Position numbers and translations under genes: made by a program
Assembly (NCBI RefSeq): GCF_006345805.1
Contig: NC_043014.1
Coordinates: 30,876,001 to 30,940,000, forward strand
Source of the DNA: Octopus sinensis
Taxonomy: Eukaryota
Length of the DNA stretch: 64,000 nt
Direction: 5' to 3'
Shown: one piece after another, positions 441-64,000 of the stretch
Layout: the number at the start of each line of letters is the position of its first letter
Numbering within the stretch: position 1 is the stretch's first letter
The notes under the pieces: model-generated
Databases searched by the model: none
The model's input: only the letters and a program-made list of their open reading frames with translations
Told to the model about the DNA's origin: nothing

Positions 441-441
441 A

Positions 442-23110: not shown

Positions 23111-23142
<32 letters not shown>

Positions 23143-24433: not shown

Positions 24434-25070
<637 letters not shown>

Positions 25071-28705: not shown

Positions 28706-28928
28706 TCTTTAGCATTCACAGTATTCTGTCAAATATAATGTTTATATAAGCAAATTGTTCTAAATTAATCATGTATAACATTGTAGCATTGCAATTTCGA
28801 TGATGTGATTGTTTATTCTTAGAATGTCATTCTGTGGTAGGTTTGTTAGGCCAGATCAGGACAGTTTGAATATAAAATAGGTAGAATATTTGGGTTGGAT
28901 ATGGCTGGTTTAAATGCTAAAGGGTTAA
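28701..28928 (+). mobile_element. piggyBac-type MITE, full length
   Basis: TTAA-CTCTTTAGCATT ... AATGCTAAAGGG-TTAA. Confidence 0.8.
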
Positions 28929-32555: not shown

Positions 32556-32587
<32 letters not shown>

Positions 32588-33301: not shown

Positions 33302-33333
<32 letters not shown>

Positions 33334-36122: not shown

Positions 36123-36172
<50 letters not shown>

Positions 36173-36232
36173 GTTGTATGCAAAATGAGCAGCTCTGAAA
36201 TATTTGGGCATTACTAAGTTGCCATCAGTTAT

Positions 36233-36459
36233 TCAACCCTTTAGCGTTCAGAATCCCTGTCAAATGCAATTCTTATTTATTCACATGATTTTGAATTAAT
36301 CATGCGCAACCTTGTAGCTTCAAGATTTTGATGAAGTAATTGCTTATTTTTATAATAACAATGTAGGGTAGATGTAAAAGGCCAGATTTGGTCAGTTCAA
36401 ACATAAAACAGGTGGAATATTTGGATTGGACATGGCTAGTTTAAATACTGAAGAGTTAA
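36233..36459 (+). mobile_element. piggyBac-type MITE copy
   Basis: tcaaccctttagcgtt ... aatactgaagagttaa, with an interior homologous to 28701-28928. Confidence 0.75.
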
Positions 36460-37234
36460 GTCAGTTAACTTTAAGATCTACATTTAGAATGGTTAAATGT
36501 AGTAGTAACTACCAGCAGTTACTAAGTTGGGGATGGTGGAATGTTAACTTATTGCCGGCAGCATTTTAGGAATATATAATAACAGTGTATAGTAGACACT
36601 ACATATATCTATCAGTAAGTATTAATTAAGTGAAACAGTTGACTCAATGCCAATAGAATCTATAATTAGATTACCTGTATCTAGTGGTCAAAGCAGGTAT
36701 TGCCAACCAACAGCTGAGGTCTGGAGAGGGTTTATAATTGTTGATGTATTTATGTCATAGTCTTACAGACTAATTTGGTTTTAGTTGGGATCATAATGTA
36801 TCAGAATTAATATATGTTGTCTTGTTGGTAACTGTCATTGAATGCTGATGTTGTTTTGAAGTAAATTTAGAGCACAAAGATACCCATTGAAAGAAACATT
36901 TGTTCATCAGTTCAACCATGGCTTCCTGTCTTCATTGTGGGAACATGTCTTAATATTTAGTACCTATGAATGTGGTGAGCTGGCAGAATTGTTAGCGCAC
37001 TGGGCAAAATGATGAGCAACATTTTGTCTGTCTTTATGTCCTGAGTTCAAATCCCACTGAGTTCAAGTTTGCCTTGCATCCTTCCGTGGTTGAAAATTTG
37101 AAACCAATATTTAGCACTAATTAGCAATGAAACTGTCTTCAGTAAACTTCTGTTCTCAAGATGTATTGCAAATGTCTCATCATTTTCTCTCTCTCTCTCT
37201 CAATGGTTCTGTGTCATTACTCCAGCTCTTGTAT

Positions 37235-37328
37235 CACTGTCTCTCTACCAAATGTCTTGTACCACTGTCTCTCTACCAAATGTCTTGTACCACTGTCTCT
37301 CTACCAAATGTCTTGTACCACTGTCTCA
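37235..37328. repeat. 28-bp minisatellite, 3 perfect copies plus a partial copy
   Basis: Unit cactgtctctctaccaaatgtcttgtac. Confidence 0.95.
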
Positions 37329-42710: not shown

Positions 42711-42741
<31 letters not shown>

Positions 42742-42759
42742 CCTACACTTCAGACTTCC

Positions 42760-42890
42760 TCATGTTCCTTTCTGTTGAAGAGCATTGGCTTGAAATGTAA
42801 AAGACTTTCTCACTTTCCTGAGCATCAAACAAATACACTTGCTTGTTATTTATACACCTGTCTTCGTCTTTTGCTTTCCTGTAAATTTCA
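42760..42890 (+). mobile_element. Penelope-like terminal-repeat fragment with a decayed hammerhead-like motif
   Basis: Homologous over ~125 bp to the reverse complement of ~59590-59725. Confidence 0.55.
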
Positions 42891-43089
42891 ATTTTACCTA
42901 AGTAAAGTCATTAATGGCAAAACCGGTCTACGATTAATTCTTTATTTTGTATATTTTCATCTGTCTTACCTGCCTATGTTCTGGTGTTTGCTGAATTTTT
43001 CTAGAGAACATTCTTTTCTTTGTGGTTAGATCGTAGGTGATCTACTTCTAGCACATTGGATGTCCACTTAGTTGTCATCCCTTCTTATA

Positions 43090-43130
<41 letters not shown>

Positions 43131-43214
43131 ACACACACACACAAAGGTGTGTGGTGTAACTCTCTTTAAATTTGTGCAGTGGTTTACCAGAGGTATCCTT
43201 GTGGATGCTATCAC

Positions 43215-43264
<50 letters not shown>

Positions 43265-44946
43265 ATAGCTGTATGTGATAGAATAGTGACTGTGAAGCTG
43301 GGTCAAAGAGGCTTTAGCAGTGGTAATAACCATTGAACACACTGTCTTTTCATTGTCTTATCTTTTTATTATTGTTTGGTTGAGAAGTTAAAATGTTTAC
43401 TTTGCATGCATATGCCACACCTTGGATAAGTTTCTTCTACCGTAGCTTCAAGTTGACCAATACCTTGTATGGAAGTCTGTACAGTCTCACATGCACACAT
43501 GAATGCAGCTGTGTGGTTAACAAACTTGCTTTGCAATCATGTGGTTTTCAGTTCAATCCCACTGCATAGCACCCTGAGTGGGTGCCTTCCCCTATAGCCA
43601 CAGGCTGACTAATACCTTGCAAGTGGATTTGATAGACGAAAACTGTGGAAGCTGTTTTACTATTTAACAACATGTATTGGTCTGTTTACACCCCCATAAC
43701 TTAATAGTTTGGGAAAAAAAGATTGATAGAATAAGTACCAAACTTTAAAAAATATGCATTTGGCCCAACTTATTCAACTAAATCCCTCAAGGTGGCGTCC
43801 CAACATGGCCACACTCTAATGACTAAAACGATTAAAAAGAATAGTAAATACTTGAAACTTAAGACATTTCCTTCTTTTCTGAGTGTCAACCTAGCACCAA
43901 CTCTCTGTTTGTTTTTTCACCTTGTTTTTGAGCTGTCTTTTTTGCACCACACACACTCACACACACACATGTATGTATCCCCTAAAAACCACATGCAACT
44001 CATTCCAGCAATGGAGAGGTGTGCTTATTTTCTTTTGTTATTGTCTGAGTTTGTTAATGGTAATGGTTAGTATTATGTATGTATATGTTGTTAGAAATAT
44101 ATACATATATCTTTTCTTTCCTGATAGTGTATACTGCCTTGCATCTTGGGCAAGTGTCTTCTACTATATCATCAGGCCAACTAAAGCCTTGTAAATAGAA
44201 GCTAAAAGATCACTCCCTCCCTCACTCATTTCTTGACTTGACTTGCATGATGGTTACAAATGAGTGATGTTGCCATACAAGATATGGAAGTCATTTCCAA
44301 TCTTCTTTAAAAACATGTCTGGTCATGGGAAAATATTGTCCTGCTGGGAAACAGGTGTGGGTTGGTAACAGGAAGAGCATCCACCTATAGAAAATTGTCC
44401 TCAACAAATTCTATATGATCCATACAAGTGCACATGTGTGTGTGTGTGCGTGGGGGGTTGCAGGCATAAGAAATTCACTTTTTAATTAATTGTTCTTAGA
44501 TTTAATCCCACTGCATGGTATTTTGGTCGAATGTCTTTTATGTTACCTTTGGGTCAATCCAAGTTTTGTAAGTGAAATTAGATGAATGGAAGTTGGAGAT
44601 GTGTGTCAAATGAAGCATACATGTAACCGAAAGGTCCCATTTTGTCACACTGTGTTGTACTGATGTTGCTTGACAATTATAGTTTGCTACACATATTCAT
44701 CATGATTTGTGTATGTGTAGCTTGCAGCAAAAGATTGCCAAGAAGATTATTGGGGGGAAGGGTGCTTTTGTATACAAATATACCATGGTTGTTTGTTTTG
44801 CTTGAGTGGCACAGACAATCCCATATCATAATCATTATACATGTCATAAAGTCATAAATCAGTGATTGGTCCATTCTGTAGCCCATAGCCTCTGTGGTTC
44901 ACCAAATACAATTAAAAAGCAAAAAGAAAAGGCTTAACAGTTAAAT

Positions 44947-45278
44947 CAGGGGTTTTCAACCATTTATTAGCCTATGGACACCTTTGTTTTACTCTGGTGG
45001 ACCCCATAGACATTCGATGTTTAAAAATAGTTTTATAGACACTTTTTTACAAATGCAGATTTTGTTTTTCACCTGTTCACTTGTGTAGGTTTGCAATAGC
45101 ACTCACTGAGAGAACATGTTCCAGTGGATAAAAACATGTTGAACTATGTAAAACACAAACACATCTAATATAAAAGTTATTCATGGATCCCCTAAAATAC
45201 TATCGTAGATCTTCAATTTATTACTTTGCTTGCTTGGACCTACAAAAATCTTATATGGACCCCAGTTGAGAACCACTG
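44947..45278. mobile_element. hAT (Charlie-like) non-autonomous element with perfect 8-bp TSD
   Basis: TIRs caggggttttcaac and gttgagaaccactg, with agttaaat on both flanks (44939-44946 and 45279-45286). Confidence 0.9.
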
Positions 45279-45884
45279 AGTTAAATTAATATTTTAAAGA
45301 AACAGAATTAACAGAAGTTAGTGCTAGGAATGTGAAGGGAACACAGAGAGCTTTTTTCCAGTAATGCCAATAATATATTCTAATATTGTTGGGTATGCTC
45401 CAGATAAATCCTTATTAAACAGGCATCAGACAAACAACTAAGTGCAGTTGTTTTCATATTTTTAAGTGCTCATTGAGAGAAGAAAATATAGCACTCATTA
45501 AAATGCTTCTTCTACATTTTTACTGTGGGTGTGCACAGAAATTTGTACTGCATACATATTTTGTCTTTCTTTATAAAGTGTGTGCGCATTCATGCAAGAA
45601 ATCATTGCTCAGATTTCTTCAATTAATCTGATTTCATCTTGCAAACTTTGTGTGCACACATTTTTTGCCTTTCTTAGTTGTAAAATGAGTATATGCACAC
45701 AAGTACATAGCTTAGAAGGACCATTGCTTATGGCCACATATATTTACAGGGCATTTGAGACTGATGGGATAAAGACAAAAGAACAATCTTCAGCCAGAAG
45801 ACCTGGTTCAAATGCTTTCAAGAGAGTGAACTCTGCTAAAGGCACTCAAGGACCAGCTGGTGGGTTTAAATGAGGTGATGGAAT

Positions 45885-47735
45885 TAAATCTACCACTCAA
45901 AATTCAAGGTGCAAAGAACCAGCATAAATACTGTATGGTATCTTGTCCAGTGCTTTAACAATTCCACCAATCTATCTACCTGGATTGGCATTTTATTTTA
46001 TTGATTCTGAAAGAATGAAAACAAATATTATGCAGTTGGATTTGAACTTGGAATGCAGAAAACCTGAAACAAATTACATAATGTATTTTGTTTTGTGCTT
46101 TAATGACTCTGCCAATTCACTGTTATTCTTGGCAAACTGTTTCATTATTGCTGTTAAATTATTTATTTTTTGTTATTTTATTTTCTTGGTAATTTTTGTC
46201 TTTTTTCTTCTGGCTATAATAAATTTTGAGGTAAAACATTTGATCATGAGCAAGCTGGATTGGTCAATAACTAACATTCTTTGCATTCTCTCTCTCTTCA
46301 TTTCTGATCCTCCTCCCCCCATCTGGGATTAAGTCTACCATGCAAAATTCAAGGTGCAAAGAGCCAGCATAAATAATGCAGAGCATCTTGTCCAGTGTTC
46401 TAACAATTCTGTTTACCTTTCAACCTGGATGGGCACTTTATTTTATCAACTTTGAAAGGATGAAAAGAAAAATTGACTGCAGTTGGATTTGAACTTGGAA
46501 CACAGAAAGACCAAAATAGATACCATGAAGTATTTTGTTCTCTACTGTAACGACTCTGCCAATTCACTGTTATTTCTGGCAAACAGCTTCCTTACAGCCA
46601 TTAATTACTTGATACAGCAGGTGTGTTTTATGCTCGAGTGTTTCTCGAATATCACAATATGCTCAATGCAATTCCTGAAAGTATGGTTTTTAAACTCCCC
46701 ATTTGTTATTATTCTCAGGATGTTAGCCTTGCTCAGCTGCTGTGCAGCAAACATTTTGATCTAGCTTCAGAATAAATTGCTGAAAATTTTTATTTGACTT
46801 CACAACTCTGAGTTACGTAAATCAGGAAATATGAAATAAAACTGTAAGACCTGCAAACTGAAGTGGTCGACCCTAACACCACATTCCTATGAGAAATATT
46901 TCTGGTGCAGGGTGGAAGAAATACCTTAAGCGTACTTAATATTTTATTATAGAATCCAGAGACAACCAACAACAACAGTAATAATAAAGCTTTAAAAAAC
47001 AAAGACAAAAATAAAAACATGCTCTAGTATTACAAAACATTTTCTGAAGACATTCCAGTAGTGAAAAAATAAAATTAAAATATACTTATGGAACAAAAAA
47101 TTTTTTAAATAAGAAGAACATTAAAAATTATAAAAAAAAAAAACACAAACCAACTACAAATAAACATTGTGATTAGAAAAATTTATTTTTAAAACACATT
47201 CTTTGAAAATGTCTATAAAGGCGGAAATTAGAGTAAGTGTATGCTTAAGGCAAAAGATGAATTTAGGTAGCAGGGTTGAAGATGTGTGTGAGGGAGAGGC
47301 TAATGGTGTTGGGGGTATGGTACAGGGGGCGGGGCGGTGGTGCTGGTTTATGTGTTGGGAGAGTGGTGAAATGTCTAGTTTACACAATTGAAATAATGCC
47401 AAGTCCTATTTTAACAATATATTTTTCCAATTTGCCAAGTGGGTAGTGTTGGAGAAGAACATGAAAAAACAAAAACAGTATCTTGTAGAGGTCTGCTCTA
47501 TCAATTCATTCGCATAAGGTTGATAATTAAAATTTCACTATCTTCCAACTTGATGAGACTTTTGTTTCTTTCTTATTTTATTTTATTTTGTTATTTTTTG
47601 GTAATTTTTGTCTTTTTCTTCTTGGCTGTAATAAACTTTGAGGCAAGACATTTGATCATGAGCAAGCTGGATTGGTCAATAACTAGCATTCTTTGCATTC
47701 TCACTCCTCATTTCTGATCTCTTCCTCCAACCCCT
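45885..47735. repeat. Old ~450-bp duplication, second copy split by ~1 kb of unrelated sequence
   Basis: 45885-46140 matches 46325-46590, and 46160-46320 matches 47570-47735. Confidence 0.8.
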
Positions 47736-48453
47736 TCTCTCTGCATATGAACAGACAATTGCAGAATAAGTAGAGTTGAACAAAATATCTTGTGATACTC
47801 CCTATGATTATCCATATCTTCTCTGTTATTTGTGGTGCAGTTGATTAGGTGCAGGCCATGTTTGCAGCCCCTAGTTAATCTTAATACTTCAGACCTAAAA
47901 TCAAAAGCATTCCAACCATGGCCATCCCAATATTTTTTTTCAAGGGTTTTAGAATGCATCATGTCTCTAACTAGTTTCAGTTCAAGAACTGTGGCCATGC
48001 TGAGGCACCACCATTATCTGTGTACTTCTTTTTAAGATGGTAGGGTTTGACTTGAAGGAGATTTAGCTGCTGTTTCTAAAAGGTCAAGCTACCAAAAAGA
48101 ACATATTTCAGTTCATACTTGAAAATAGATTTATGATACTGATTGACTGATTGGTCTGGTTGTTCAAATTATATCTACTGAGCTAATCAAATACTTAGAA
48201 TTAACCACTGACCCAGCATTATGTGTGTGTGCGTGTGTGTGTGTGCGTGTGTGTGTGTGTGTGTAAATGTTTGTTTTCATGTTGAGTTATAATAAAAACA
48301 ATTTTACATTAATCTGATAGGTTACTCTATGCTTTTGTAGAGTACAAATTTATTTCTAAACAAAAATATTGTTGAAGTTTTGGCCAGTGATAGCTTAGCT
48401 GGCCAAAACTTCAAAGTCATTGTCAACAACATTTTTGTATATATTGTGCGCAT

Positions 48454-48490
<37 letters not shown>

Positions 48491-49013
48491 TTCCAGCTGT
48501 TCAGTATTTACATTGTACATATTATTGTGCAGTTGTTGCTTAGTCCTTGGTCAGCCCTTTTGAAACTGATCATCTGATCTTTATTAGACATGGTCTCTAA
48601 TATTCTATTCAAATTGATGGAGGTGGGGTGTAATGCAGTTGTATAGAGACTCCTTCAGTTTGTTACGCAGTTGATTAAGTGGGTATGTTGTGTTATATGG
48701 AGTCAGTTACAGTGTAGCAGTGTTGTGTGGTTTGTAGATGCAGTGCTATTATATAGGAATGTTGTGTGATGTATACATGCAGCCTGGTTATATAGGAATA
48801 TTATGTGATCTATAGGTCAGAGTGTGGTTATGTAGGAATGTTGTGTAGTCTATAGATAGTGGAGTTATGTAAGAATGTTGTGTACTAGTGTGTGTATGCT
48901 GCAGAATGTTAGTTAATTTTTTTTAAATATTAAGATGTTTTTGTGTTATGTTATGGTATGTGCAGCCACTGCTCATTTGTTCACATATTCTTCTGTACAT
49001 ATACTGAAGGCAT

Positions 49014-49059
<46 letters not shown>

Positions 49060-50402
49060 TTATGTGCATGTTTGTGTATTTGTGTGTGTGTATACAGAGA
49101 AAGAGAGTGAGGTATATGTGTCTGTGCAGACAGAAATATATACACACAAACGTGTACTTATACACATGCAAAATATACCTACATACAGTCTTATATATTT
49201 GAAGATTTGTATATATATATTACTCAGCATATCTAGGTATTTCTCTCTCTGTCTCTGTGACTGTCTGTCTGTCTGTCTATCTGTCTCTCTCTTATGAACA
49301 CACACCCCTCTAAATATTTTCATTTGTATATAGATAGGAGCACATCATTTCATTACCATATAAATGTCAGGTTACATCTGATATATTGTTTTGAGGTTTT
49401 TACCTGTTTGCAAAGTCAGTTTAGTGTAGGTAAGAATGTACACATTTATGTATTACACTGCGTCTCTCTTTCACATATTCCCTGCCTGTCTACCTCTGTC
49501 TATGTGTCTGTCTGTCCCTCTCTGGTTGTCTTTCCCACTCTCTTTCTCTTTCTATATATCATTCTCTCTTTGTCTGCTTCTCCTTTCATATTTGAGAAAA
49601 TTGATGAGTATACTATATATTCTCCAAAAATGAAAATTCTTTCATTCTTCGCTTAATTAAATTTATTGTTACAGACACTCTTTCTCTCCCTCTTTCTTTT
49701 TCTCTCTCTCACACTCACAGATATCCAAAATTTATGCATCAGCTTTTTGTAACTGGAACAGCTATATGTTGATATGTTTGTGCATTTATTTATTTTATTT
49801 TATTTTCATTGTTCAGCCAAGAACTGCAAGTAACCTTGATAGTTTGGAGTTTGACTAAGATAAGGAATGTAGTATTAACTTTCTGTGACAAACTTGATAT
49901 ATTTTAGTAAATGGTTTTAGCCGTTGTAAGATATCTTTGTAAAACGTTTTGTATCTGTATATAAAGGGTATAGGCATGGCCGTGTGGTGAGAAGTTTGCT
50001 TCTCAACCACATGGTTCCACGGTCAATCACACTACATAGCACCATGGGCAAATGCCTTCTACTATAGCCTTGGTCTGACCAAAACTTTATGAGTGGATTT
50101 GGTAGACACAAACTGAGATTATATATATTGGTTCCACTTGGGCCTAGCAATACTAATAAACTGGTGCTAGAGCTCAATTTACATATGTCTTACAGTAAAG
50201 CATTAGCTGGGTACAGAGCATTACATGAAATTAAACTAATGACAAAGGAACAAAATTATGCAATGAATTTCATCATCTTACAGCTGTTTCTACTACAGGG
50301 TGCAGTGCAGTGTAAATATTAGGTATAGTTACATTCTCATTATGATCTGAAGTCTATTTTATTGCACTGGAGTGTTTTCAATGAAGTTTTTAAAAATTTC
50401 AT

Positions 50403-50561
50403 AGCTGGAGTGGCTGTGTGGTAAGTAACTTGCTTACCAACCACATGGTTCCGGGTTCAGTCCCACTGCATGGCACTTTGGGCAAGTGTCTTCTACTATA
50501 GCCTCGGGTCGACCAAAGCCTTGTGAGTGGATTTGGTAGACGGAAACTGAAAGAAGCCCGT

Positions 50562-50592
<31 letters not shown>

Positions 50593-50802
50593 GTTTGTAT
50601 GTTTGTGTATCTGTGTTTGTCTCCCCAACATTGCTTGACAACCGATGCTGGTGTGTTTAGGTCCCTGTAACTTAGTGGTTCAGCAAAAGAGACCGATAGA
50701 ATAAGTACTAGGCTTACAAAGAATAAGTCCTGGGATCGATTTGATTCGATTAAAGGCAGTGCTCCGGCATGGCCGCAGTCAAATGACTGAAACAAGTGAA
50801 AG
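50403..50802 (+). mobile_element. tRNA-headed SINE, near full length
   Basis: A box tggctgtgtgg, B box ggttcagtccc, internal (TA)n tract, 3' end ...gactgaaacaagtgaaaga. Many decayed copies (e.g. 27500-27890, 39500-39880, 40855-41180, 43490-43840). Confidence 0.9.
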
Positions 50803-51659
50803 AATTAAAATATTTTTAATATTCCTTTTTTCTGATGTAAAATGGAATAACAGATGTTGACATAAAAAGACTTTCCTGAAGGCATAACCTTTATCATTTT
50901 ATACAATCTTTGTTATATGTGTGTATATTACACGCGCACATATATATATATACTTTTATTAAAGCTGCTAAATCATCACAAAAACTGTTCCTCAGAGTTT
51001 CACATTCCCATTCATTGGACAGTTGTGATGAAAACTTGCAGCTTTAATAAAACCATACTACTCTGCCTTTGGTATTCAAATACTATTTGTTCTAACTTGT
51101 TTTGCACTTATGTGCTCACCTGTGTGTGTGTGTATGGGAAAGTGAGGCTTATCCCTTGGTTCTGTTCTCATAATTGTTTCACTAATCCAATAACAACGAT
51201 GCAAAGTATGTAGCCCTTAAAACAGTTTTTGTGCTTTTACATAGAATACTGAACTGTCTTACACAGGGTTTTGTTTTTAGGAATTCCCAATAAGTTATGA
51301 ATACCCAAATTGTGAAGTCAGTTATATAATAATATGAAATTACTTACCTGATAGTAAGAATTCAAATAAAGTAGGCTTTATTGTAAGATCCTGTGTAAGA
51401 CAGTTCAGTATTCTTATTTTGGTTAGTGACTTTCCTATTGTTTAGGAAAATACTATTTACTTGTTTAAGGCTTGTACTGCGTAAATTGCAAAAATAACTA
51501 ACAGTTCAAATACTAAGAAATAAGCATACTGAATTTCATTTTTACCAAATAATTTAGGAATATGAATAGTTTATTTCCCTTGGCTATGTATAAGGATTCC
51601 TTCTAGGGGCGAATGGGTTATTTCCCTGGGTTCTTAAAATAAAATATATTAGATATATA

Positions 51660-51850
51660 TAAGGATCTCTTCCAGGGGCCCTATTATCGATTTTTTTCAA
51701 CAATCTGAGTTTGCTATGAGGTTTCCAGAGATGAGTTCTACTCACTGGTCAAGTTTCATCAAAATTGATAAAATGATGTAGGAGGAGTTAGTTAACAACT
51801 TCACAAACACATCCATAGACAGAATTCCCCACATTTGTAGTAGATATATA
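51660..51850 (+). mobile_element. Possible Helitron/Helentron-associated non-autonomous 3' segment
   Basis: caagtttcatcaaaat...cacaaacacatccatagacaga...tagtagatat layout, recognised by resemblance only. Confidence 0.35.
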
Positions 51851-51929
51851 TGTTCTATGGAAGATATTTGTCCTCAGCCATCTGGACTTTTTCTCTCAAC
51901 CATAATCACTCCTTTGTCAATTTAATAGT

Positions 51930-52365
51930 GGAACTTGAGGTAGTTCAGCTGTGCTACAACAAGAAGATTGCATTAGTCAAAGAGTGAGCTACTGGAGAAA
52001 CTAAAAGAATTTTGACTCCTTGGCGTGAAAACAAGCGAGTTATGTAGTGGTTATACATAAGGAAGATCCTAGAGGAACTGGCATCAAACTTTGGGATCTA
52101 GAGTTATTCCAACCCCATAACAGGATATCACTACGTTATTCCAAAGATCCCAGCCAGTTTGTCTAGAGTAAGAACTAGGTACTGCAATAGCTTGAGGTTT
52201 AAAGGCCCACAGCTATTTAATATCATGCCAAAATACCTGAGAGAACTACATGGAGTGAAGGATAGATGTTTTCAAGAAGCACCTTGATCTTTTGTTCTCC
52301 AAGATTCCAAATGAACATACATCACAGCAAGAAACTTAAACAAGAGCAGCACTATCAAACTCACC
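51930..52365 (+). mobile_element. CR1/L2-group LINE ORF2 C-terminal remnant
   Basis: KILEELASNFGI...RTRYCNSLRFKGPQLFNIMPKYLRELHG...VFKKHLDLLFSKIPNE. Confidence 0.8.
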
Positions 52366-53006
52366 CTATCACCAAAAGCCAATCACATAAAAATGGCTAT
52401 TGAAAAGATTCTGACAGCACTGTCGCACCATGGACGCAGCCTTTGGGCTGAAATGCATTGAGGAATATATGTGTGTGTGTTTGTGTGTGTGGTTATAACT
52501 TTCCACATATTGGCCATGTTAAGGTAATTTTGGTGTGCATGTAGGTTACACTGTTGTTTCTTTAATAAAATCAAAATAATTTAGTCAGTGGTAGAAATCA
52601 GAGCCCATTGCCATATCAGGTCTGCCTGGACTTGTGAGATTGATGTGGTTAATATTTGGTTATAACATCAACAGATAAACATCTGCAAAATGCAAATTAA
52701 TGATCTGCTCTGAACAGTTGAAGCAGATTAAACTTTCTTAAAGGCACCCAGTGACCAAGTATTAAACTAAATGTTTAAAAGCATTCCAACCATGACTATA
52801 ATCATTCAATTCGTATTTATATAATATGTTATTCCATTTTTAGATGGTAGAATATAATTTAAAGAATATTTGACTGCAATTTGTAGCAGCCCAAATGGTC
52901 ACACAGAGGCTTGTGTTTAAATTGGCATTTATTAATTAAGATTCCTTAACCAATCTATCTCAATCCTTAGCATATCTCACAATTTTATTCTATTTCTCTT
53001 TTACAG

Positions 53007-53090
53007 TCAGCCGCTTATTCTGTGAATCTGAATCTTTCAAGATGTATCTTATCTTGGATGTCAATACACAGACGTATCCAGTGGAACTTG
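53007..53090 (+). CDS. POLR2H: Internal coding exon of RNA polymerase I/II/III common subunit RPB8 (RPABC3), or an orphan duplicate of it
   Basis: Acceptor attttattctatttctcttttacag|, donor TTG|gtaagt, 84 nt, phase 1-1. Translates (V)[27 protein letters not shown](G), matching 22 of 27 residues of human [29 protein letters not shown] as recalled from memory. Confidence 0.9.
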
Positions 53091-53160
53091 GTAAGTCACA
53101 CTTCATTTGATACTTTAATTGGTTTGTTTTGTCTCTACAATTCACTGTCTATCTTTTATG

Positions 53161-53228
<68 letters not shown>

Positions 53229-54449
53229 CACACACACACACACACACACATATTTTCTCTCCCATGTACATTTAACTGTCCTCTCTCTCTCTCTCATGTA
53301 TATTTAACTGTCCTATCTCTCCCATGTACAATTAACTGTTTTCTCTAGCTTATATTTCACTGTTCATTCTCTTACCTTTTACAGTCTTTCCTCACATGCT
53401 TCACTGTCCTTTCTCTCACATTTTACTGTCCCCTCTCTTACGTTTCACTATTCTCTCTTTAGATTCCAGTGTCTTAATGTTTACTCAATATTTTCTTTTG
53501 CATTTCAGTTTCCCTTCTATATTTCAGCAATATCTGTACAAATCCTGACTGACTAGGTGAAATACTCACCTTTTTGTCAGGTGAAATACTCACCTTTTTG
53601 TCAAATGTAAAACTATGCTTTACCCTATACTGCAACTTTTGTAGGAGTTCAACTTGTGATATTCTAGGATCTTAGTTGCTCTATCTTTATTAACTAATTT
53701 TATACCAGCTTATGATGGCCTCTGGTGTAACAACAGTGCTACAGCTGCAGCAGATGTTATCATCCTTCTTTCCCCATTCTTTTTCTACTCCTGTTTCTGT
53801 CTTTCCTTCTCTCACAAAATTACTGCAAGATAATCACTGAGTCTCTCAACCTGTTAGATATAGCAACCAAATCACACCCTACTATCTTTAATATGTAAGG
53901 ACACATTGGATCATGTAGTCTAAGGTATACAAAGGACAGGATTATCCACCATAGATTTACTTTTGCAGTACTGACATCAAACAACAGCAACAGTATCATA
54001 AAGGAGTTTTTAAAATGTGATATGTCTTTCCACTGTGGTTGTGAGTTTAATGAAACAGTGTCATTTATTTGCATTTAATAGAGTAGGGCTAGGAGATTAA
54101 TGATCAAGTCAATTTTTTGCTACTTTGAACAACTTGCCTGTAGGCAAAACTCAACTTGCCACTGTTAAAGCTCAGAATAATAAGAGATAAACTAAAAACA
54201 CTATTTCAATGCCTTTTTTAAGTTTGGAAACGGGGTTACTTTACTGCTGGTTCTCTAGCTTTCATCCACCCCTTCCTTCCCAGGAGCTCCCTGTGTACCT
54301 GTATAGTCATGTTACAACATATCTCTCACAATGATCAAAGAATATCACCATCATCACCATTTAATGGCCATGTTCCATGCTGGCATGGGTTGGATGGTTT
54401 GATGGGATCCAATGAGTTCAACAACAGCATTGTGCTCTAATGCCATAAG

Positions 54450-55040
54450 TCTTTCCACACTTTCTGTAGTTTTTATGACCTGCTCCCACAATTTGATACC
54501 TCTGTAATTACTCCTCTCTAAGGCATCTCCTTTACCACTGTAACAGTTGACAATAATACTGCTACATTAGTCACTGGATATGACATTTTACAGTACCGCT
54601 TGATTAACTATGCAGGTAACAAGCTTGTGCCCCATTCCATTAAGTATTTTAAGCAGCTCAGCAGTAATTCCTTATGAACCAGGGGTTTTCCCTGTCTTTA
54701 TATCCTTAATTGCTTTATCTATCATACTTCAGTCAACTAGAATGGTCTTTCTGTTGGATTCATACTTGGAAGACTTTGTTTCTCCCATTCATTCTACACA
54801 TTTAGTTGCCTTTTATAAGGTACCTTTCATGCCTCTTTCTTTTCAGAATCACTCAGTGGAAGTGTATCATTTTCCTTCCATATGCACTTCACTCTGACAA
54901 CATCTTGATTTTCTTGATATACTGCTTTGCAATCTGGATGCAACTCATGTCTCTGATCTTCATAATGTAGAACATTGGCAAACATCTTTGTTTTACTTAC
55001 TGCCTTACTAAATAGACCTGCCTCTTAGTCTCTCTTCTAG
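54450..55040 (-). mobile_element. RTE LINE ORF2 fragment (linker to RT start)
   Basis: NEWEKQSLP...DKAIKDIKTGK...KGDALERSNYRGIKLWEQVIK. Same family as 9727-10490. Confidence 0.85.
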
Positions 55041-55093
55041 TTACATGGTGTAGTTCTCTACTGTCCCCATTCTTCCAATCTTTCAAAACTTGC

Positions 55094-55130
<37 letters not shown>

Positions 55131-55449
55131 CCCTCATTTCAGTTGCCAGTTACTTGGTGACCTCACTAGTGCTGGTGCCATGGAAAAACACTAAGTACAC
55201 TCTGTAAAGTGGTTGAGGTTACAAAAGTATCCAAATGTAGAAACCATGCCAAACAGACATTGGAGTTCGGTGCTGTCCTCTGGCGGGACAGTCCCTGCTG
55301 AACAATTCAGTCCATGTTAGCAGAGAAAACAGACATTAAATGATAATGGCGATAATATATACATTCTTGTGTTTGTGTATATGCATGTATAGAGTTGAAT
55401 ATGCTGTACAAGATATTGAAACTATTACTCTTAGCAGAAATAAATGGTG

Positions 55450-55860
55450 AAAAATAATCTGGTCTGGGGTAAAAGGTTTTTAAGAAAGCAAACAACAGTA
55501 TGCAGAAATTAAGAGAACCGTGGAAAAATATCAGTCTGATAACCATGGAAATAGTGTTGTCCTTTAGTTGCTCAATGTGTGGTAAGACAAGGCTTTCGAA
55601 GGCTGGCTTAACTTCACATCTCAGATTATGTTTTCCTATAGTTGGCCCAAATGATACAAAGATCATTCCAGCATTAATGCTTGTGCCACATTTGTAATAC
55701 TTGTAAGACTTAGCTACTCTAGAAAGGCATTTAAATATCCATAAAGCAAACAATACAAACAAAAATGTGTCAATTTCAGAGAGACATATTTGCTCTGTTT
55801 GAATGCAAATTTCAAACAATTCATGGAACTTTAAAGTCACTCTCATGCTCATGCATGAAA
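55450..55860 (+). mobile_element. Decayed LINE C-terminus with C2H2-like zinc fingers
   Basis: FSCSMCGKTRLSKAGLTSHLR plus two further broken C-x2-C...H remnants. Confidence 0.55.
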
Positions 55861-56060
55861 AAGTACAGCTAACAAGAAGTGGTCAAGCTTTGAATAGGAG
55901 CAGATTCACTCTTTCAATATCTGTCTCGTTCCTCTTCCTCTATCATTCCCTCCTCTCCCTCTATATATTAATCAATGAAATTCCAACCAAGTATGATTTT
56001 CACATTAATTTACAATTTTTACAATATTGAAACAATCTAGGACTTTCATGCGTTTTGCAG

Positions 56061-56472
56061 TCATCAGGTTTATGTAGTGACAGTCATGATCCACAACTGA
56101 CAACTGTCATGAAATGGTTAGATTTGTCCTTTAAATATCCTCTGATGGGTGATGGGCTCCAGCAGACTGAATCTTATGAACTGTATTTTAACCAATCAGT
56201 ATACAACATAAAATTTCACAATTTGGTGACTGTGCCAACTAAGTTCTAAACTGTATTTTGATTAATCAGTGTGTGGCTTAGATTTCACAGTCTGGTGAAA
56301 GCGACAGTTTGGCTAGTATTTATCCCGCTTTTTTCAACAAGATATTTTAGTCAATTGGTGTGTGGCTTAGATGTCACCGTTTGGTGGGTACATCAAGGAT
56401 TTTTTACTTTGACCACACCTAAAGGAACGATTGTTTGGCTATATTTTGGAAAGTTGTAAACAACATATATGT

Positions 56473-56541
<69 letters not shown>

Positions 56542-56852
56542 GAGGTGCCCACCAAACCATGACATCTAAGCTGCACACCAATTGACAAAAATATTTTCTT
56601 GAAAAAATTGGGATAAATACTAACCAAATTGGCACATTCACGAAACTGTGACATCTCTGCCACATACTTAGTTGTCAAAATATAGTTAGAACTTAGTTGT
56701 CACCAAACCATGACATATAAGCTACTTAGTTATTGGTCAAATTACAGTTCATATGATTCAGCCTGCTGGAGCCCATCGGAGGGTATTTAAAAGATAAATT
56801 TTGCTACAGTTGTCAATTGTGAAACATGACTGTCACTACATAAACCTGATGA
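56061..56852. mobile_element. Foldback-like element with ~310-335 bp inverted arms and internal subrepeats
   Basis: 56061-56395 is inverted at 56541-56852. Arms carry repeated gtgtggcttagat(g/t)tcac..tggtg units. A (GT)n tract lies in the spacer. Confidence 0.85.
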
Positions 56853-57205
56853 TTTGTGTGTGTGTGTGTGTATTGCTATTAACCAGACTGGCCAGGTGGA
56901 GCAGGCCAACACTCCTCTTGAATGGAATGCCAGTCTGTTGCAGGGTTGCCTATTTACAGCTGAGTAGACTGGAGCAACATGAAATGAAATGTTTTGCTTA
57001 AGAGCACAATGCAGCACCGTCTGGAAATTAAAAGCATGATTGCAAGATCATGAGTATAGTACCCTGATTACTTGGCCATGCACCTTATGTGTGTGTGTGT
57101 GTGTAATATGTAGCATTATTCATGTGGCAAGTTTTTACAACCAGATGCCCTTCCTGTTGCCAATGTATATATGTGTGTGTGTGTATAAATATATATATGT
57201 ATGTA

Positions 57206-57431
57206 TACAGTAACTCCTCGCCATATTGTGGTTCAGTTATTGCGGTTTATTATTTAAGCTTACATTGATTCCTCCATTGTGTTGTTTTGCATTTGTAATA
57301 AAATAAATATATACAAATTATAAAAATAAGAAAAAAGAATATACAGTACAGTACTGTTTCTATGTCGTGAATTTTCACCTATTGCAGTGGGTTTGGAACG
57401 TAACAGCTGTGATAGCCAAGGGATTATTGTG
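57206..57431. mobile_element. Tigger/pogo-type MITE
   Basis: tacagtaactcctcg ... ccaagggattattgt. Inverse copy of 27951-28164. Confidence 0.75.
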
Positions 57432-57609
57432 TGTGTGTGTGTATTCTTTTATTCTTTTACTTGTTTCAGTTATTTCACTGCAGCCATGCTGGAGCATCAC
57501 CTGTAGTCGAACAAATCGACCCCAGGAATTATTCTTTGTAAGCCTAGTACTTATTTGATCGGTTTCTTTTGCTGAACTGCTAAGTTACAGAGACATAGGC
57601 ACATCAACA

Positions 57610-58260
57610 AATGGTCCTCCAGAAATGGGGGGTAGGAGTTGCTGGTGAGTTTGACACCTTCTGGCACTCAGAAAGGCCCAACAAGTTCATTTCTTATGAT
57701 TTCTGTCCAAAACATGACACCACCACCTCTTTGTTGACATTGAATGCGATAAGCTCCAAGGGATACCCAAACTTTGGTCCATCCATTGGGACCATCCAGA
57801 ATAGTTCTGGCTTCATCCATGAAGAGGACATCTTGGAAGTTGATCTTCATGTACTTCCATGCCCAGTCAGTACACTTCTTTGTGGTTTTTGCTTAGGATG
57901 GGTCTGGCGATGCACTTAACACTTCTGGCTGTCTCTTTAGGGATCCTAAACTGGGTGCTTCTGGAAAAAGGAGCAACCCCAACATTTTAAAATATAGCAG
58001 CACTTCTGCTACCAAGGTCAATTCTTACTTGTGTACCTATTTTTTGGATACACTTCTTCTCATACCTTTATCTTGCCTTGGTTTTTGTGATGTGGTTTTC
58101 AATATATGCATTCAATTTTCTTATATCCCTACCAAGCTCTTAAGCTAATTCTCCCACAGATAAGCCTTCTGTGAGACCTGGAAAAATCTGCATCTTATCT
58201 GTAGCTGTCAGACGTTTCAGGGGAATTTCTGTACACTTGCAAAAAAGCATGACAGTTCAA
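57610..58260 (-). mobile_element. Tc1-like transposase remnant
   Basis: NFQDVLFMDEARTILDGPNGW...QRGGGVMFWTEIIRNELVGPF, with an upstream decayed HTH region. Confidence 0.85.
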
Positions 58261-58452
58261 AGCATTTCAAAATGAATGACTCAACATAGCTTTGTAATGT
58301 GGCTTATCAGTGCGATTGGCATGATCACTGTATATATACCTACCTAGGATCTTTCAGTGGGCCTAGTTTCATGTTTCTACAATGTGTAATATTCAAAATA
58401 CCAGCAGAGGTTTGAGCTGCTAAAATGCGTGTTAAACAGTTTGTATATATGT

Positions 58453-58529
<77 letters not shown>

Positions 58530-58534
<5 letters not shown>

Positions 58535-59800
58535 TTAGAGATAAAACCACTATTAGGCAAATCAAACAGTGAAAAACATAAGCCAATACATAAAATTAAT
58601 TTAAAAATATAAAAGTTAAAAATTAAAATAATTTAAACTTATAAATTTTAAATATATATATACAAATATATATATATATATATATATGTATGTATATTTT
58701 TATATTTATATATTATTTTGTTTATTAATTAATTAATTAATTAATTAATTTTTTATTTATTTATTTATTTATTTTTTATATAAATATCAAAAGTATTAAA
58801 AGTTAAATAAAAGATAAAGAGTAAAACACTACGATCGTTTCATGGCTGTACCAATTCGAATAACAATAATTTAAATTCAGTTAATAATTCGAGTTATGGT
58901 TACAGTCAATCTTCAGGTTAATTGAAATATTTAAAAAATAATCAGAAATATTTAAACAATATTTTTAAGATATAAATAATATAATAATTTCACTTATAAT
59001 AAACTCTACTATCAAACTAGAAACTTAAAACTTAATAATTATGATTATATCAAAATCGATTATAATGTTAAATATTAATTTTAATTTTTAAGGTAAGAAA
59101 CCCACCTATAATCTAATGTCAGTAATAGTCTATATTTAATTACATAAACATTTTTAAAAAAATGACTATTATATAAAAAATATTATCAATGGATATATAT
59201 ATAAATGTATATGAATATTATAATTAAGATCTAAAATAATCTCTATAAATAAATATATATGCACATATAATAAAGTACTAATAAATTAATATTTCATATT
59301 TAAAGATGAAATATCTAAATTCAAAAATACAAACAAACAAACTTAAACGAACTTTCGGAAATCTTATTTAAAATACTTATAGAAATAATCAATTCGAAGT
59401 TATATAGTATCGAATAAATACTATAAATATATTTATCAATGGCAAATATCAATTTAAAAAGACAATAACTAAGTTATGCTATTAAGTTAGACATGGCCTG
59501 GACCAATCTTTGGTCGAAACATATCTAAGTTTATCTAAGTTTATTATAAGAAATTTAAAACTACAATATATATATATATATATATATAACGGGAAGCTTT
59601 ATGAAAATAAACAAAAGACGAAGGCAGGTGGAAAACAAACGAACAATTGTATTAGTATGGCGCTCAGGAAATATAAATAAAACAAGTCTTTAACGTTTCG
59701 AGCCTACGCTCTTCAACAGAAAGATACACAGAGAGAGAAAAACACAGAAAGAAGGAGAGAAAAAAAATGCGTGCAGTAGCTAACGAATCAACATGGCGGA
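58530..59800. mobile_element. Penelope-like terminal-repeat-derived AT-rich region with hammerhead-like motifs
   Basis: Contains CUGA/GAAAC hammerhead-type motifs with palindromic stem III on the minus strand. No RT or GIY-YIG ORF recognised. Confidence 0.45.
59687..59724 (-). ncRNA. Minimal type I hammerhead-like motif (core variant CUGUUGA)
   Basis: Minus strand: UCUUU-CUGUUGA-A-GAGC-GUAG-GCUC-GAAAC-GUU-AAAGA. Confidence 0.45.
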
Positions 59801-60478
59801 TATATATATATGTCTCTCTCTCTCTCTCTTTCTATATATATATATATATATGTATGTCTATATATATATAGGTATATATATATATATATATACACACACA
59901 TACATATATACACACACATATATATACACATACATATATATATACACACATATATATACACATACACACACACATATATATATATATATATACATATACA
60001 TACCTTTTATCACCACCTTGACTTGCCAGTGCCATCTTGACTGGCTTCCGTGCCGATGGCACGTAAAAAGCGCCAACCGATCGTGGCCGTTGCCAGCCCC
60101 ACCTGGCACGTAAAGAGCACCCACTACACTCATGGAGTGGTTGGCGTTAGGAAGGGCATCCAGCTGTAGAAACACTGCCAGATCAGACTGGAGCCTGGTG
60201 CAGCCTCCTGGCTTCTCAGACCCCGGTCGAACCATCCAACCCATGCTAGCATGGAAAACGGATGTTAAATGATGATGATGATAATATACATACATACATT
60301 ATATATATATATATATATACATTATATATATATATACATACATACATACATATATATACATACATACATATATATATACATACGTACGTACATACATACA
60401 TACATACATATATATATATACATACATCATATACATATATACATACATCATATACACATATGTATACATACATACATA

Positions 60479-60521
<43 letters not shown>

Positions 60522-60950
60522 CGATGACTGGCATCTGTGCTAGTGGAGCGTGTGATCATTGCCAGAGCAGCCAGTAGCGTGTAAAAAGCACTATTTGAGT
60601 GAGATCATTAACAGCGTCGCCTTACTGGCACTTGTGCTGGCAGTACGTGAAAAATCATTCGGGCGAGGTTGTTGCCAGTGCCGCTGGACTTGCTCCTGTG
60701 CAGGTGGCATGTAAAAAACACCATTGGAGTGTGACTATTGCTAGTACTGCCTGACTGGCCCTTGTGTCGGTGGCACGTAAAAGCACCCACTACACTCTCA
60801 GAGTGGTTGACATTAGGAAGGGCATCTAGCTGTAGAAACTCTACCAGATCAAGATTGGAGTCTGGTGCAGCCATCTGCTTCGCTAGTCCTCAGTCAATTC
60901 ATCCAACCCATACTAGAATGGAAAGCGGACGTTAGATGATGATGATGATG

Positions 60951-61004
<54 letters not shown>

Positions 61005-61369
61005 TCACATGTATATGTATGCACACACATGCATGCAAAGTGGTGTCTTCATAGTTTCCAACTACTAGATTCCACTCACAAGATATTGGTCTTTCCATGC
61101 CAACAGAAAATACGGAATTACAATCTGTGTTGGAACTTCTTTGATCTCCTAAATGGTTGAGGACCAGCCTGGTAACTTAACCGTTTTACATTCATGTTAC
61201 TCAGTTAAATGTAACACTTATTTGTTCCCGTTGTTTTCAATTAATCATGCATTATCTCATAGAATCAAGACTTCTTTGATGTTATTTTTTTTCTTGTTGT
61301 TTTTACATGCTGGGGCACCACTTTGAAGAATTTTTAGTCAAATGATTCTGCCCTCAGAATTTTTTCTCC

Positions 61370-61459
61370 TATATATACATACATACATTTGTGTGTATAT
61401 ATATATATATATATAACATATATATATACATATATACATCACACACACACATTTGTGTG

Positions 61460-61505
<46 letters not shown>

Positions 61506-62334
61506 ATACATTTGTGTATATATATATATAATATATATTATATATATATACACATTTGTGTATATTATATATATATATACATTTGTGTATATATATATAT
61601 AATATATATACCATTTGTGTATATCTATATATATAGATATATACATTTGTGTATATATATATATATATATACATTTGTGTATATATATATATATTTGTGT
61701 ATATATAATATATATATTTGTGTATATATTATATCATTTGTGTATATATAAGATATATATACATTTGTGTATATATATATATATATATACATTTGTGTAT
61801 ATATATATATATATATACATTTGTGTATATATCTATATATATAATATACATTTGTTATATATAATTATACTTTGGTATATATCTATATATACATTTGTGT
61901 ATATATAATATATATATATATATACATTTGTGTATATATATATATATATACATTTGTGTATATATATATATATATATATACATTTGTGTATATATATATA
62001 TATATTATATACATTTGTGTATATATATATATATACATTTGTGTATATATATATATATACATTTGTGTATATATATATAGATATATACATTTGTGTATAT
62101 ATATATATGTATGTATATATATATATACATTTGTGTATATATATATATATATGTATATATGTATATATATATGTATATATGTATATATATATGTATATAT
62201 ATGTATATATATATATGTATGTATGTATGTGTATATATATGTATGTGTATATGTACGTATGTGTATATATATGTATGTTCTATATATATACATTTGTATG
62301 TATATATATGTATGTATATATATATATACATTTG

Positions 62335-62381
<47 letters not shown>

Positions 62382-62450
62382 GTGTATATATATGTATGTG
62401 TATATGTACGTATGTGTATATATATGTATGTATATATATATATACATTTG

Positions 62451-62482
<32 letters not shown>

Positions 62483-62720
62483 ATAATATATATATATATA
62501 TTTATATACATATACATTTAAATAAATATATACATATATAACATACATATATATGTATAGATGCTTATATGTATACTAATGTGTTTATATATATGTGTGT
62601 GTTTATGTGTGTGTGTATTTATTTATATGTGTGTGTGTGTGTGTGTGTATTTATATATATATATGTGTGTGTGTATTTATATATATATGTATGTGTGTAT
62701 AAATATATATATATGTACAT
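61370..62720. repeat. Compound (TA)n microsatellite/minisatellite with recurring CATTTGTG anchor
   Basis: More than 20 acatttgtg(t)-type anchors separated by variable (TA)n. Confidence 0.95.
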
Positions 62721-64000
62721 GTATGTGTATATACTGTAAAAAGCCATGTAATTTGCACTTGTGATTTTCAGGACAAAAATTGTTAAGAAAAGGTACTCAT
62801 GTAAAATTCGCACCCAAAAGTTTTCAGAATTGCTGATATGGCGAGGGAGAAATGGTTTTCAATTTAGTTGTATTTAGCATAATTTCACTTACTTATGATT
62901 AGATTTTTATAAGTTTTCATTAAATAAAAATAATTTCTGTTTAACAAGTATCACATTGAAAGCTGTTAAATTACGAAGTCTTTGTGTTGTTTATAATAAA
63001 ATTTGTTTTACATTTCTTCCCCACAAGAGATTATGTCCAATCTTTTGCATACTTCTGTACGTCTTCTTAAATCACCATCACAGGAAAAAATTGTTGATAA
63101 TTCTTATCAACTAAAACAAAGCTGATAAATATGCACAAGTGTTGCAAACTAAGTTTAATTACAAATAAACATCAGCTTGGATGACACTTTACTCAACTGA
63201 CAGAGGAAGGTAGCTGATCAAACTGATTATGTAAACAGAATTCTGATTGGTCAAAAGTGTCTTCTTGTCTCAAGCTCTGATTTTCTACCTATTCTTGTTG
63301 GAACCTTTGATACGGAATATCGAAATTTTAATCCCTTTCACACTTATAAAATGTCAAGCAAACTTTAAAATTTGTCATTACTGTTTTAGCCAGGAGACCA
63401 AACTGATAGTTTGGCAACCCATTAAAATAAACTTTAAAAATCGACAAGGAGAAAATAAACAGCTTTGCTAGCTTAACTTGGTGTTTATTGAGCAAAAGAG
63501 GTGCGAAATTTTAGAAGTGACTTGTTAGAATATACACATCTGTGAGGAGACATAAAAAAGAATAGTAAAAATCTACTATTCCAAAAAAACTGGTAATACA
63601 TACATTACAAGTGTTCTATGAAGTGAACATAAGATTGCTGCATAATTCGACATGAATGTGAAATGACATTAAACATTGTATAAGGTAAATGAAGGTTTCT
63701 GTAGGAACGCTAAGTCATATTCACTTAGTGAGTTTACATGCACAAGGATGAATTATGATGTTGTCGTTGTTGCCGTTAGATGCTGTAAGAGCTGATAATG
63801 GTGATACCGGCAATGAGGAATTTCATTGTGTCATAACATAGAGAAAGCTAGCGAATAGCTTCCTGGTGCAAATGCACGCTAGACTCCCCAAGCGTAGAAA
63901 AACTGATCTATTTAAGGAAATTGCTTGTCTCCTTTGTAATAGGAAGAAACTCCAAGCAATGTAAAATATGGCCCAGACTGTGATTACCAGCATGAAAGTC

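What the first reader, a model, noticed from the sequence alone, without database searches (positions are those of the whole stretch)
53007..53090. Apparently orphan RPB8/POLR2H exon with intact splice sites
Seen: a clear RPB8 exon. By eye I found no preceding exon ([24 protein letters not shown]-like) in the 53 kb upstream and no following exon (DKFRLV...) in the 11 kb downstream. Inference: (a) POLR2H has very long introns here and may overlap another gene's 5' end, (b) the exon was duplicated or captured with its intronic flanks (segmental duplication or Helitron-type capture), or (c) there is a misassembly. The exon is 84 nt and also stop-free in phase 0 ([28 protein letters not shown]), so it could splice in frame into the putative upstream gene as a chimeric cassette exon.
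Basis: partly seen in the sequence, partly recalled or inferred. Interest (0 to 1): 0.72.

Follow-up and report, generated by a model that had tools for sequence, protein, structure and literature searches.

The report
Ordinary RPB8 exon between giant octopus introns
The "orphan" exon is the normal second coding exon of the octopus RNA polymerase subunit RPB8 gene; it looks isolated only because that gene spans about 350-370 kb, so its neighbouring exons lie outside the 64 kb window.

Summary
Window 53007-53090 (+) is an 84-nt RPB8/POLR2H exon with a pyrimidine tract, an AG acceptor and a GTAAGT donor. No other RPB8 exon lies in the 64 kb window, even when the octopus protein is the query.

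The exon is not an orphan. Its peptide is 100% identical to residues 25-53 of the annotated RPABC3 proteins of Octopus sinensis and O. bimaculoides. Those genes span 370,887 bp and 352,921 bp in two independent assemblies, and no other gene is listed inside either range.

The same 84-nt, phase 1-1 exon is coding exon 2 of 4 in oyster, abalone and Biomphalaria, where the gene spans 13, 52 and 60 kb. Spliced cDNA contigs from a related cephalopod match the window only at 53005-53091. Of their 15 differences from the window exon, 13 are at third codon positions.

Duplication or Helitron capture, misassembly and a chimeric cassette exon have no support. The stop-free second frame is what chance gives (17-25%).

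The gene is already annotated and the finding is ordinary. The one mild curiosity is how large this housekeeping gene is.

The parts
53007..53090 (+). RPB8 (POLR2H/RPABC3) coding exon 2 of 4. It is 84 nt with phase 1 at both ends and encodes residues 25-53 (V25 and G53 are split codons).
   Evidence: tblastn gives 100% identity to Octopus sinensis RPABC3 residues 25-53. Pfam PF03870 scores 28.9 bits. Oyster, abalone and Biomphalaria have the same exon length and phase. Cephalopod cDNA matches only 53005-53091. 13 of 15 substitutions are at third codon positions.
52982..53006 (+). 3' splice site of intron 1: the pyrimidine-rich tract attttattctatttctcttttacag ending in AG.
   Evidence: Read directly from the sequence. 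The cDNA alignment ends here.
53091..53096 (+). 5' splice site of intron 2: GTAAGT.
   Evidence: Read directly from the sequence. Oyster has G|gtaagt at the homologous position.
1..53006 (+). Part of intron 1, at least 53 kb. It is AT-rich and full of microsatellites and decayed transposon fragments, and it contains no RPB8 exon 1.
   Evidence: tblastn with the octopus protein finds no exon 1. GC is 0.23-0.41. A Pif1 2B-domain fragment lies at 8495-9034 (-) and there is a weak HTH_48 match at 13374-13661. Rfam and tRNA scans find nothing.
53091..64000 (+). Part of intron 2, at least 10.9 kb. It holds microsatellites, a short tandem repeat, a palindromic repeat and dispersed repeat copies, and it contains no RPB8 exon 3.
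   Evidence: tblastn finds no GDKFRMV... exon. Repeats are listed.

Best explanation
The window is a piece of an Octopus chromosome, O. sinensis/O. bimaculoides-like, lying inside the single RPB8 (POLR2H/RPABC3) gene. Positions 53007-53090 are that gene's ordinary second coding exon. It is spliced at a canonical AG acceptor and GTAAGT donor to exon 1 ([24 protein letters not shown]) and exon 3 (GDKFRMV...). Both neighbours lie outside the window because the octopus gene has giant, repeat-filled introns, with a total range of about 353-371 kb. Shown here: the exon's identity, its boundaries and phase, the conserved exon structure in other molluscs, the gene range in two octopus annotations, and purifying selection on the exon. 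Inferred: that this copy is the one used in the annotated gene, and that the window belongs to one of those species or a close relative.
For: The exon peptide is 100% identical to residues 25-53 of O. sinensis XP_029647766.1 and O. bimaculoides XP_052831208.1. The gene ranges are 370,887 bp in GCA_006345805.1 and 352,921 bp in GCA_001194135.2, each with no other gene listed. The homologous exon in Ostrea edulis is 84 nt and phase 1-1, and the exon-2 matches in Haliotis rubra and Biomphalaria glabrata have the same extent. All three have four coding exons, with gene ranges of 13.2, 52 and 60 kb. Four spliced cDNA contigs of a related cephalopod encode full-length RPB8 and match the window only at 53005-53091. 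Their exon 1/2 and 2/3 junctions fall exactly at 53007 and 53090. 13 of 15 nucleotide differences are at third codon positions and only one amino acid changes. There is no second copy of the exon or its flanks in the window.
Against: No DNA of the octopus gene could be fetched because its range exceeds 100 kb. The window was therefore not placed inside the annotated gene by direct alignment, and the number of copies of this exon in the genome was not counted. The annotated range could be inflated by distant untranslated exons. A 350+ kb gene is far above the octopus median (gene 20 kb, intron 2.5 kb in O. vulgaris; PMC10700109), so this gene is an outlier and not simply typical of the genome.
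Confidence: 0.93

Rival explanations
1. The exon is a recent extra copy, made by segmental duplication or transposon (Helitron-type) capture with its intronic flanks. It sits away from the real RPB8 gene and is not used in RPB8 mRNA.
For: No neighbouring exons lie in the 64 kb window. A Pif1-type helicase fragment, a Helitron-like relic, lies at 8495-9034 (-). Two copies of a dispersed repeat lie in inverted orientation around the exon, at 50646-50809 and 57447-57609, with 85% identity.
Against: The annotated genes are themselves 353-371 kb long, so isolation is expected for the genuine exon. The helicase fragment is 44 kb away and is a single 47-residue domain match in a 180-aa stop-free stretch. 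The flanking repeat has at least four more copies in both orientations elsewhere in the window, so it is an interspersed repeat and not a pair of element termini. The exon is perfectly conserved in protein and shows a third-position substitution pattern. Its splice sites are intact.
Confidence: 0.04
2. A misassembly has separated the exon from the rest of a compact RPB8 gene.
For: Only the isolation of the exon. The repeat-rich sequence is hard to assemble.
Against: Two independently assembled and annotated Octopus genomes give nearly the same very large gene range. Gastropod orthologues already have 11-kb and 39-47-kb introns, so long introns in this gene are a lineage trend.
Confidence: 0.02
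3. The exon also serves as an in-frame cassette exon of another, overlapping gene, read in phase 0 as SAAYSVNL...
For: Phase 0 is stop-free. One transcript contig of a related cephalopod (L006) joins a different 5' sequence to the exon-2 acceptor.
Against: An open second frame of 28 codons occurs in 17-25% of controls. L006 keeps the RPB8 frame, not phase 0, and it is a single assembly contig that begins with a poly(A) run, so it may be a chimera. No other gene is listed in the gene range of either octopus annotation. Apart from the RPB8 exon, the only Pfam matches among the 20 ORFs submitted were Pif1 2B (strong), HTH_48 (weak, below cutoff) and a chance-level Integrin_A_Ig_3 match (E=0.074).
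Confidence: 0.01

Closest known systems
Octopus sinensis RPABC3 (XP_029647766.1) and Octopus bimaculoides RPABC3 isoform X1 (XP_052831208.1)
   Same: Residues 25-53 are identical to the window's exon translation. Both genes are annotated with a 353-371 kb range, which explains the isolation.
   Different: Nothing detectable at the protein level. The window's species cannot be told apart among Octopus species with these tools, and no DNA-level alignment to those loci was possible.
Molluscan POLR2H orthologues (Ostrea edulis, Haliotis rubra, Biomphalaria glabrata)
   Same: All have four coding exons with introns at the same places. Exon 2 is 84 nt, phase 1-1, with AG and GTAAGT sites in oyster, read at base level. 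The exon-2 matches in abalone and Biomphalaria have the same extent by tblastn.
   Different: Their gene ranges are 13, 52 and 60 kb against about 360 kb in Octopus. Intron 2 is 0.8-1.2 kb in those species but at least 10.9 kb here, and intron 1 is 1.9-11.5 kb there but at least 53 kb here.
Human RPB8 / POLR2H, subunit H of RNA polymerases I, II and III (for example PDB 2f3i, 5flm chain H)
   Same: The octopus protein aligns end to end with the human chain at E=9e-78. The exon peptide is 83% identical to human residues 25-53.
   Different: The human gene is compact, roughly 10 kb (from my memory, not tested here).

Membership tests
RPB8 / RPABC3 (Pfam PF03870 RNA_pol_Rpb8) | Sequence match to the family profile above the curated cut-off | tested here: met
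   The 29-residue exon peptide scores 28.9 bits against a cut-off of 25, E=1.4e-6, matching profile positions 19-46 of 141.
RPB8 / RPABC3 (Pfam PF03870 RNA_pol_Rpb8) | Identity to an annotated full-length orthologue from the same genus | tested here: met
   100% identity over residues 25-53 of O. sinensis and O. bimaculoides RPABC3. The full protein matches solved Pol II subunit H at E=9e-78.
RPB8 / RPABC3 (Pfam PF03870 RNA_pol_Rpb8) | Conserved exon boundaries and intron phase of coding exon 2 | tested here: met
   The exon is 84 nt and phase 1-1 in the window and in oyster, checked at base level. The tblastn extent is the same in abalone and Biomphalaria. Exon-sized ORFs with the same limits occur in other taxa.
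RPB8 / RPABC3 (Pfam PF03870 RNA_pol_Rpb8) | The remaining coding exons (1, 3 and 4) are present at the same locus in colinear order | not testable with these tools
   They are not in the window. The annotations give only the gene range of 353-371 kb, and no DNA was returned because the range exceeds 100 kb.
RPB8 / RPABC3 (Pfam PF03870 RNA_pol_Rpb8) | The exon is spliced into mature RPB8 mRNA | tested here: inconclusive
   Spliced full-length cDNA contigs from a related cephalopod have junctions exactly at the homologous boundaries. No transcript data from the window's own species was available.
Helitron-captured gene fragment | The fragment lies inside an element with a Rep/helicase gene or with Helitron termini (5' TC, 3' CTRR with a hairpin) | tested here: inconclusive
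   The only helicase-like sequence is a decayed Pif1 2B-domain fragment 44 kb upstream on the opposite strand. The termini were not searched for. The inverted repeats flanking the exon belong to a dispersed repeat family with at least six copies in the window.
Segmental duplicate or orphan exon copy | More than one copy of the exon plus its intronic flanks in the genome | not testable with these tools
   There is one copy in the window. No octopus genome could be searched at the DNA level.

The most novel reading that the evidence does not exclude
The octopus RPB8 gene is an extreme outlier: about 360 kb of primary transcript for a 149-residue housekeeping subunit shared by Pol I, II and III. 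Its giant introns may not be just repeat ballast. They could carry alternative first exons giving N-terminal variants of RPB8, as the single contig L006 hints in a related cephalopod. They could also hold unannotated nested transcripts or regulatory elements that constrain the gene's size in both Octopus species.
Probability: 0.08. Interest if true: 0.35.

Novelty: already known. Interest (0 to 1): 0.1.

Why it matters
It matters little. The result clears a false alarm: an exon that looks orphaned in a 64 kb window is a normal exon of an annotated gene in a genome with very long introns. The practical lesson for the scan is that, in cephalopod-type genomes, missing neighbour exons within tens of kb is not evidence of duplication, capture or misassembly. 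The one point of mild biological interest is that a small, constitutively needed polymerase subunit is encoded by a gene of roughly 360 kb. That is about 18 times the median octopus gene length and 6-27 times the size of its orthologues in other molluscs.

Tried and rejected
A 43-aa padded query returned only exon-sized ORFs from other taxa, not the window's species. The full-length hybrid query then found the Octopus proteins.

2. I tried to fetch the DNA of the octopus genes. It was not returned because the gene ranges exceed 100 kb, so the window could not be aligned to them.

3. Twenty of the longer, non-repetitive ORFs were scanned against Pfam. Apart from the RPB8 exon there were three matches: Pif1_2B at 8495-9034 (-), a weak HTH_48 (Mos1 transposase) match at 13374-13661 (+), and a chance-level Integrin_A_Ig_3 match at 29880-30353 (+) (E=0.074, 13 bits against a cut-off of 23.6). 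Several ORFs that looked to me like Tc1/mariner DDE or LINE reverse-transcriptase fragments gave no Pfam match, so they remain unconfirmed: 11650-11934 (+), 57671-57892 (-), 54357-54566 (-) and 27233-27445 (-).

4. Rfam and tRNA scans of the window found nothing.

5. I considered that the inverted repeats flanking the exon (50646-50809 and 57447-57609) mark a mobile element that captured it. I rejected this because the same roughly 165-nt repeat occurs at four or more other places in both orientations.

6. I considered the open phase-0 frame as a signal and rejected it as chance.

Full report
**1. The observation**

The sequence at 53007-53090 (+) reads ttctatttctcttttacag|TCAGCCGCTTATTCTGTGAATCTGAATCTTTCAAGATGTATCTTATCTTGGATGTCAATACACAGACGTATCCAGTGGAACTTG|gtaagtcaca. 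In the frame that starts with two bases of a split codon it encodes (V)[27 protein letters not shown](G).

- tblastn with human RPB8 finds this segment as the only significant match in the window: residues 25-53, 83% identity, E=2e-10.
- The 29-residue peptide alone exceeds Pfam's gathering score for PF03870 RNA_pol_Rpb8 (28.9 bits against 25).

**2. Whose exon it is**

A full-length RPB8 query against the protein collection returned Octopus sinensis RPABC3 (P0050, XP_029647766.1, 149 aa). Residues 25-53 of that protein are identical to the window's exon, including the unusual [18 protein letters not shown] stretch. Its 90% cluster also holds O. bimaculoides RPABC3 isoform X1 (P0145, XP_052831208.1), which has the same exon peptide.

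The window's composition fits an octopus genome by my own knowledge: GC is mostly 0.30-0.41, falling to 0.23-0.26 in microsatellite blocks, and TA/CA microsatellites are abundant. I did not test that point further.

**3. Where the neighbouring exons are**

With the 100%-matching octopus protein as query (word size 2, E up to 50), no other RPB8 segment is found anywhere in the 64 kb.

The explanation comes from the annotations. The gene encoding P0050 spans 370,887 bp on a 55-Mb contig of GCA_006345805.1. The gene encoding P0145 spans 352,921 bp on a 48-Mb contig of GCA_001194135.2. Both places are listed with their called genes, and RPABC3 is the only gene listed in either.

A 149-residue protein spread over about 360 kb must have introns of tens to hundreds of kb. 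Finding no neighbour within 53 kb upstream and 10.9 kb downstream is what the genuine exon should look like.

**4. Exon structure in relatives**

| Species | Gene range | Coding exons | Introns 1 / 2 / 3 |
|---|---|---|---|
| Ostrea edulis | 13.2 kb | 4 | about 1.9 / 1.2 / 9.6 kb |
| Haliotis rubra | 52 kb | 4 | about 11.5 / 0.9 / 39 kb |
| Biomphalaria glabrata | 60 kb | 4 | about 11.3 / 0.8 / 47 kb |
| Octopus (two species) | 353-371 kb | not seen | intron 1 at least 53 kb, intron 2 at least 10.9 kb (from the window) |

- In oyster, exon 1 ends ...TTTGATCGAG|gtgagt, exon 2 is ag|TGTCCAGA...GATTTGG|gtaagt, and exon 3 begins ag|GTGACAAATTC. Exon 2 is exactly 84 nt with phase 1 on both sides, as in the window.
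- Abalone and Biomphalaria have the same four-exon layout.
- Exon-sized ORFs from other animals stop at the same limits.
- The window's exon is thus the ancestral coding exon 2. Long introns in this gene are a molluscan trend that is scaled up about 6-7 fold in Octopus.

**5. Transcript evidence and selection**

A cluster member (P0146) is encoded on 86 short Logan contigs. Four were fetched (L002-L005), and each carries an uninterrupted 149-codon RPB8 ORF, so they are spliced mRNA.

- They match the window only at 53005-53091, at 82% nucleotide identity.
- Their exon 1/2 and 2/3 joins (...GACAGAG|TCAGTCGC and GGAACTTG|GAGACAAG) fall exactly at the positions homologous to 53007 and 53090.
- Of the 15 nucleotide differences across the exon, 13 are at third codon positions and only one amino acid differs.
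- The window's copy has therefore been under purifying selection. It is not a decaying stray copy.

**6. The alternatives**

- **Duplication or capture.** There is no second copy of the exon or its flanks in the window. The one helicase-like sequence, a Pif1 2B domain at 8495-9034 (-), is a decayed fragment 44 kb away. The inverted repeats at 50646-50809 and 57447-57609 belong to a dispersed repeat family of about 165 nt with at least four further copies in the window. A very recent duplicate cannot be excluded without a genome-wide search.
- **Misassembly.** Two independent assemblies give the same gene scale.
- **Chimeric cassette exon.** A stop-free 28-codon second frame occurs in 25% of all 84-nt stretches of this window and in 17-19% of shuffles of the exon. 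Apart from the RPB8 exon, the 20 ORFs scanned gave only a Pif1 2B match, a weak HTH_48 match and a chance-level integrin-domain match. Rfam and tRNA scans find nothing.
- **Contig L006.** One contig from a related cephalopod joins a different 5' sequence to the exon-2 acceptor while keeping the RPB8 frame. It is a single contig that begins with a poly(A) run, so it may be an alternative first exon or an assembly chimera.

**7. What it does**

From established knowledge, RPB8 is the small beta-barrel subunit shared by RNA polymerases I, II and III. The octopus protein aligns end to end with subunit H of solved human polymerase structures at E=9e-78. The exon supplies residues 25-53 of that fold. 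Nothing about the exon itself is unusual.

**8. Verdict**

The gene is already annotated in RefSeq for two Octopus species.

The only mildly notable fact is the gene's size. In O. vulgaris the median gene is 20,288 bp and the median intron 2,467 bp (PMC10700109), so a gene of about 360 kb for a 149-aa housekeeping protein lies far in the tail.

What I could not do was align the window to the octopus chromosomes to place it and to count copies. That step, together with junction reads, would settle the small remaining doubt.

Noticed in passing
window 8495-9034 (-): A 180-aa stop-free stretch carries a Pif1 helicase 2B domain (PF21530, E=4e-16). It is probably a decayed Helitron or Pif1-like helicase relic inside the intron.
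   Followed up: partly
window 13374-13661 (+), 11650-11934 (+), 57671-57892 (-), 54357-54566 (-), 27233-27445 (-): There is a weak HTH_48 (Mos1 transposase) match at 13374-13661 (E=1e-3, below the cut-off). The other four ORFs look by eye like Tc1/mariner DDE or LINE reverse-transcriptase/tail fragments, but they gave no Pfam match.
   Followed up: partly
window 50646-50809, 57447-57609 (inverted), 39716-39883, 21856-22016, 40856-41017, 31950-31997: A dispersed repeat of about 165 nt, SINE-like, occurs in both orientations. The two most similar copies (85%) happen to bracket the RPB8 exon at -2.2 kb and +4.4 kb.
   Followed up: partly
window 56061-56852: A nested set of inverted repeats (56061-56107/56806-56852, 56151-56201/56727-56777, 56249-56396/56540-56687) forms a palindrome of about 790 bp centred on a (GT)n run. 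It looks like a foldback or MITE-like element.
   Followed up: no
window 53160-53437: About 70 nt downstream of the exon's donor site lies a (CT)n(CA)n microsatellite. It is followed by about five loose copies of a 32-nt unit, TCTCTCCCATGTACATTTAACTGTCC....
   Followed up: no
window 24300-24950, 58000-59900, 61400-62500: Large TA/CA-rich microsatellite blocks drop GC to 0.23-0.26 and generate long spurious 'YIYIYI' ORFs in all frames.
   Followed up: no
L006 1-220 (Logan SRR24189501 contig, related cephalopod): A transcript contig has an unrelated 5' sequence, giving the ORF start MTRTSSTKSKSKGDFVAVVKRKKKQT, joined exactly at the exon-2 acceptor in the RPB8 frame. The join is not preceded by AG, so it is not a retained intron. 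It may be an alternative first exon or an assembly chimera.
   Followed up: partly
L007 and L008 compared with the window: Intron 2 of POLR2H is short (0.8-1.2 kb) in oyster, abalone and Biomphalaria but at least 10.9 kb in the octopus window. Intron expansion in Octopus therefore also affected the intron that is smallest elsewhere.
   Followed up: partly
L009 1001-1456 (Perognathus longimembris, GCA_023159225.1): An 'RPABC3-like' gene of a pocket mouse is a single uninterrupted 151-codon ORF. It is an intronless retrocopy of POLR2H.
   Followed up: no
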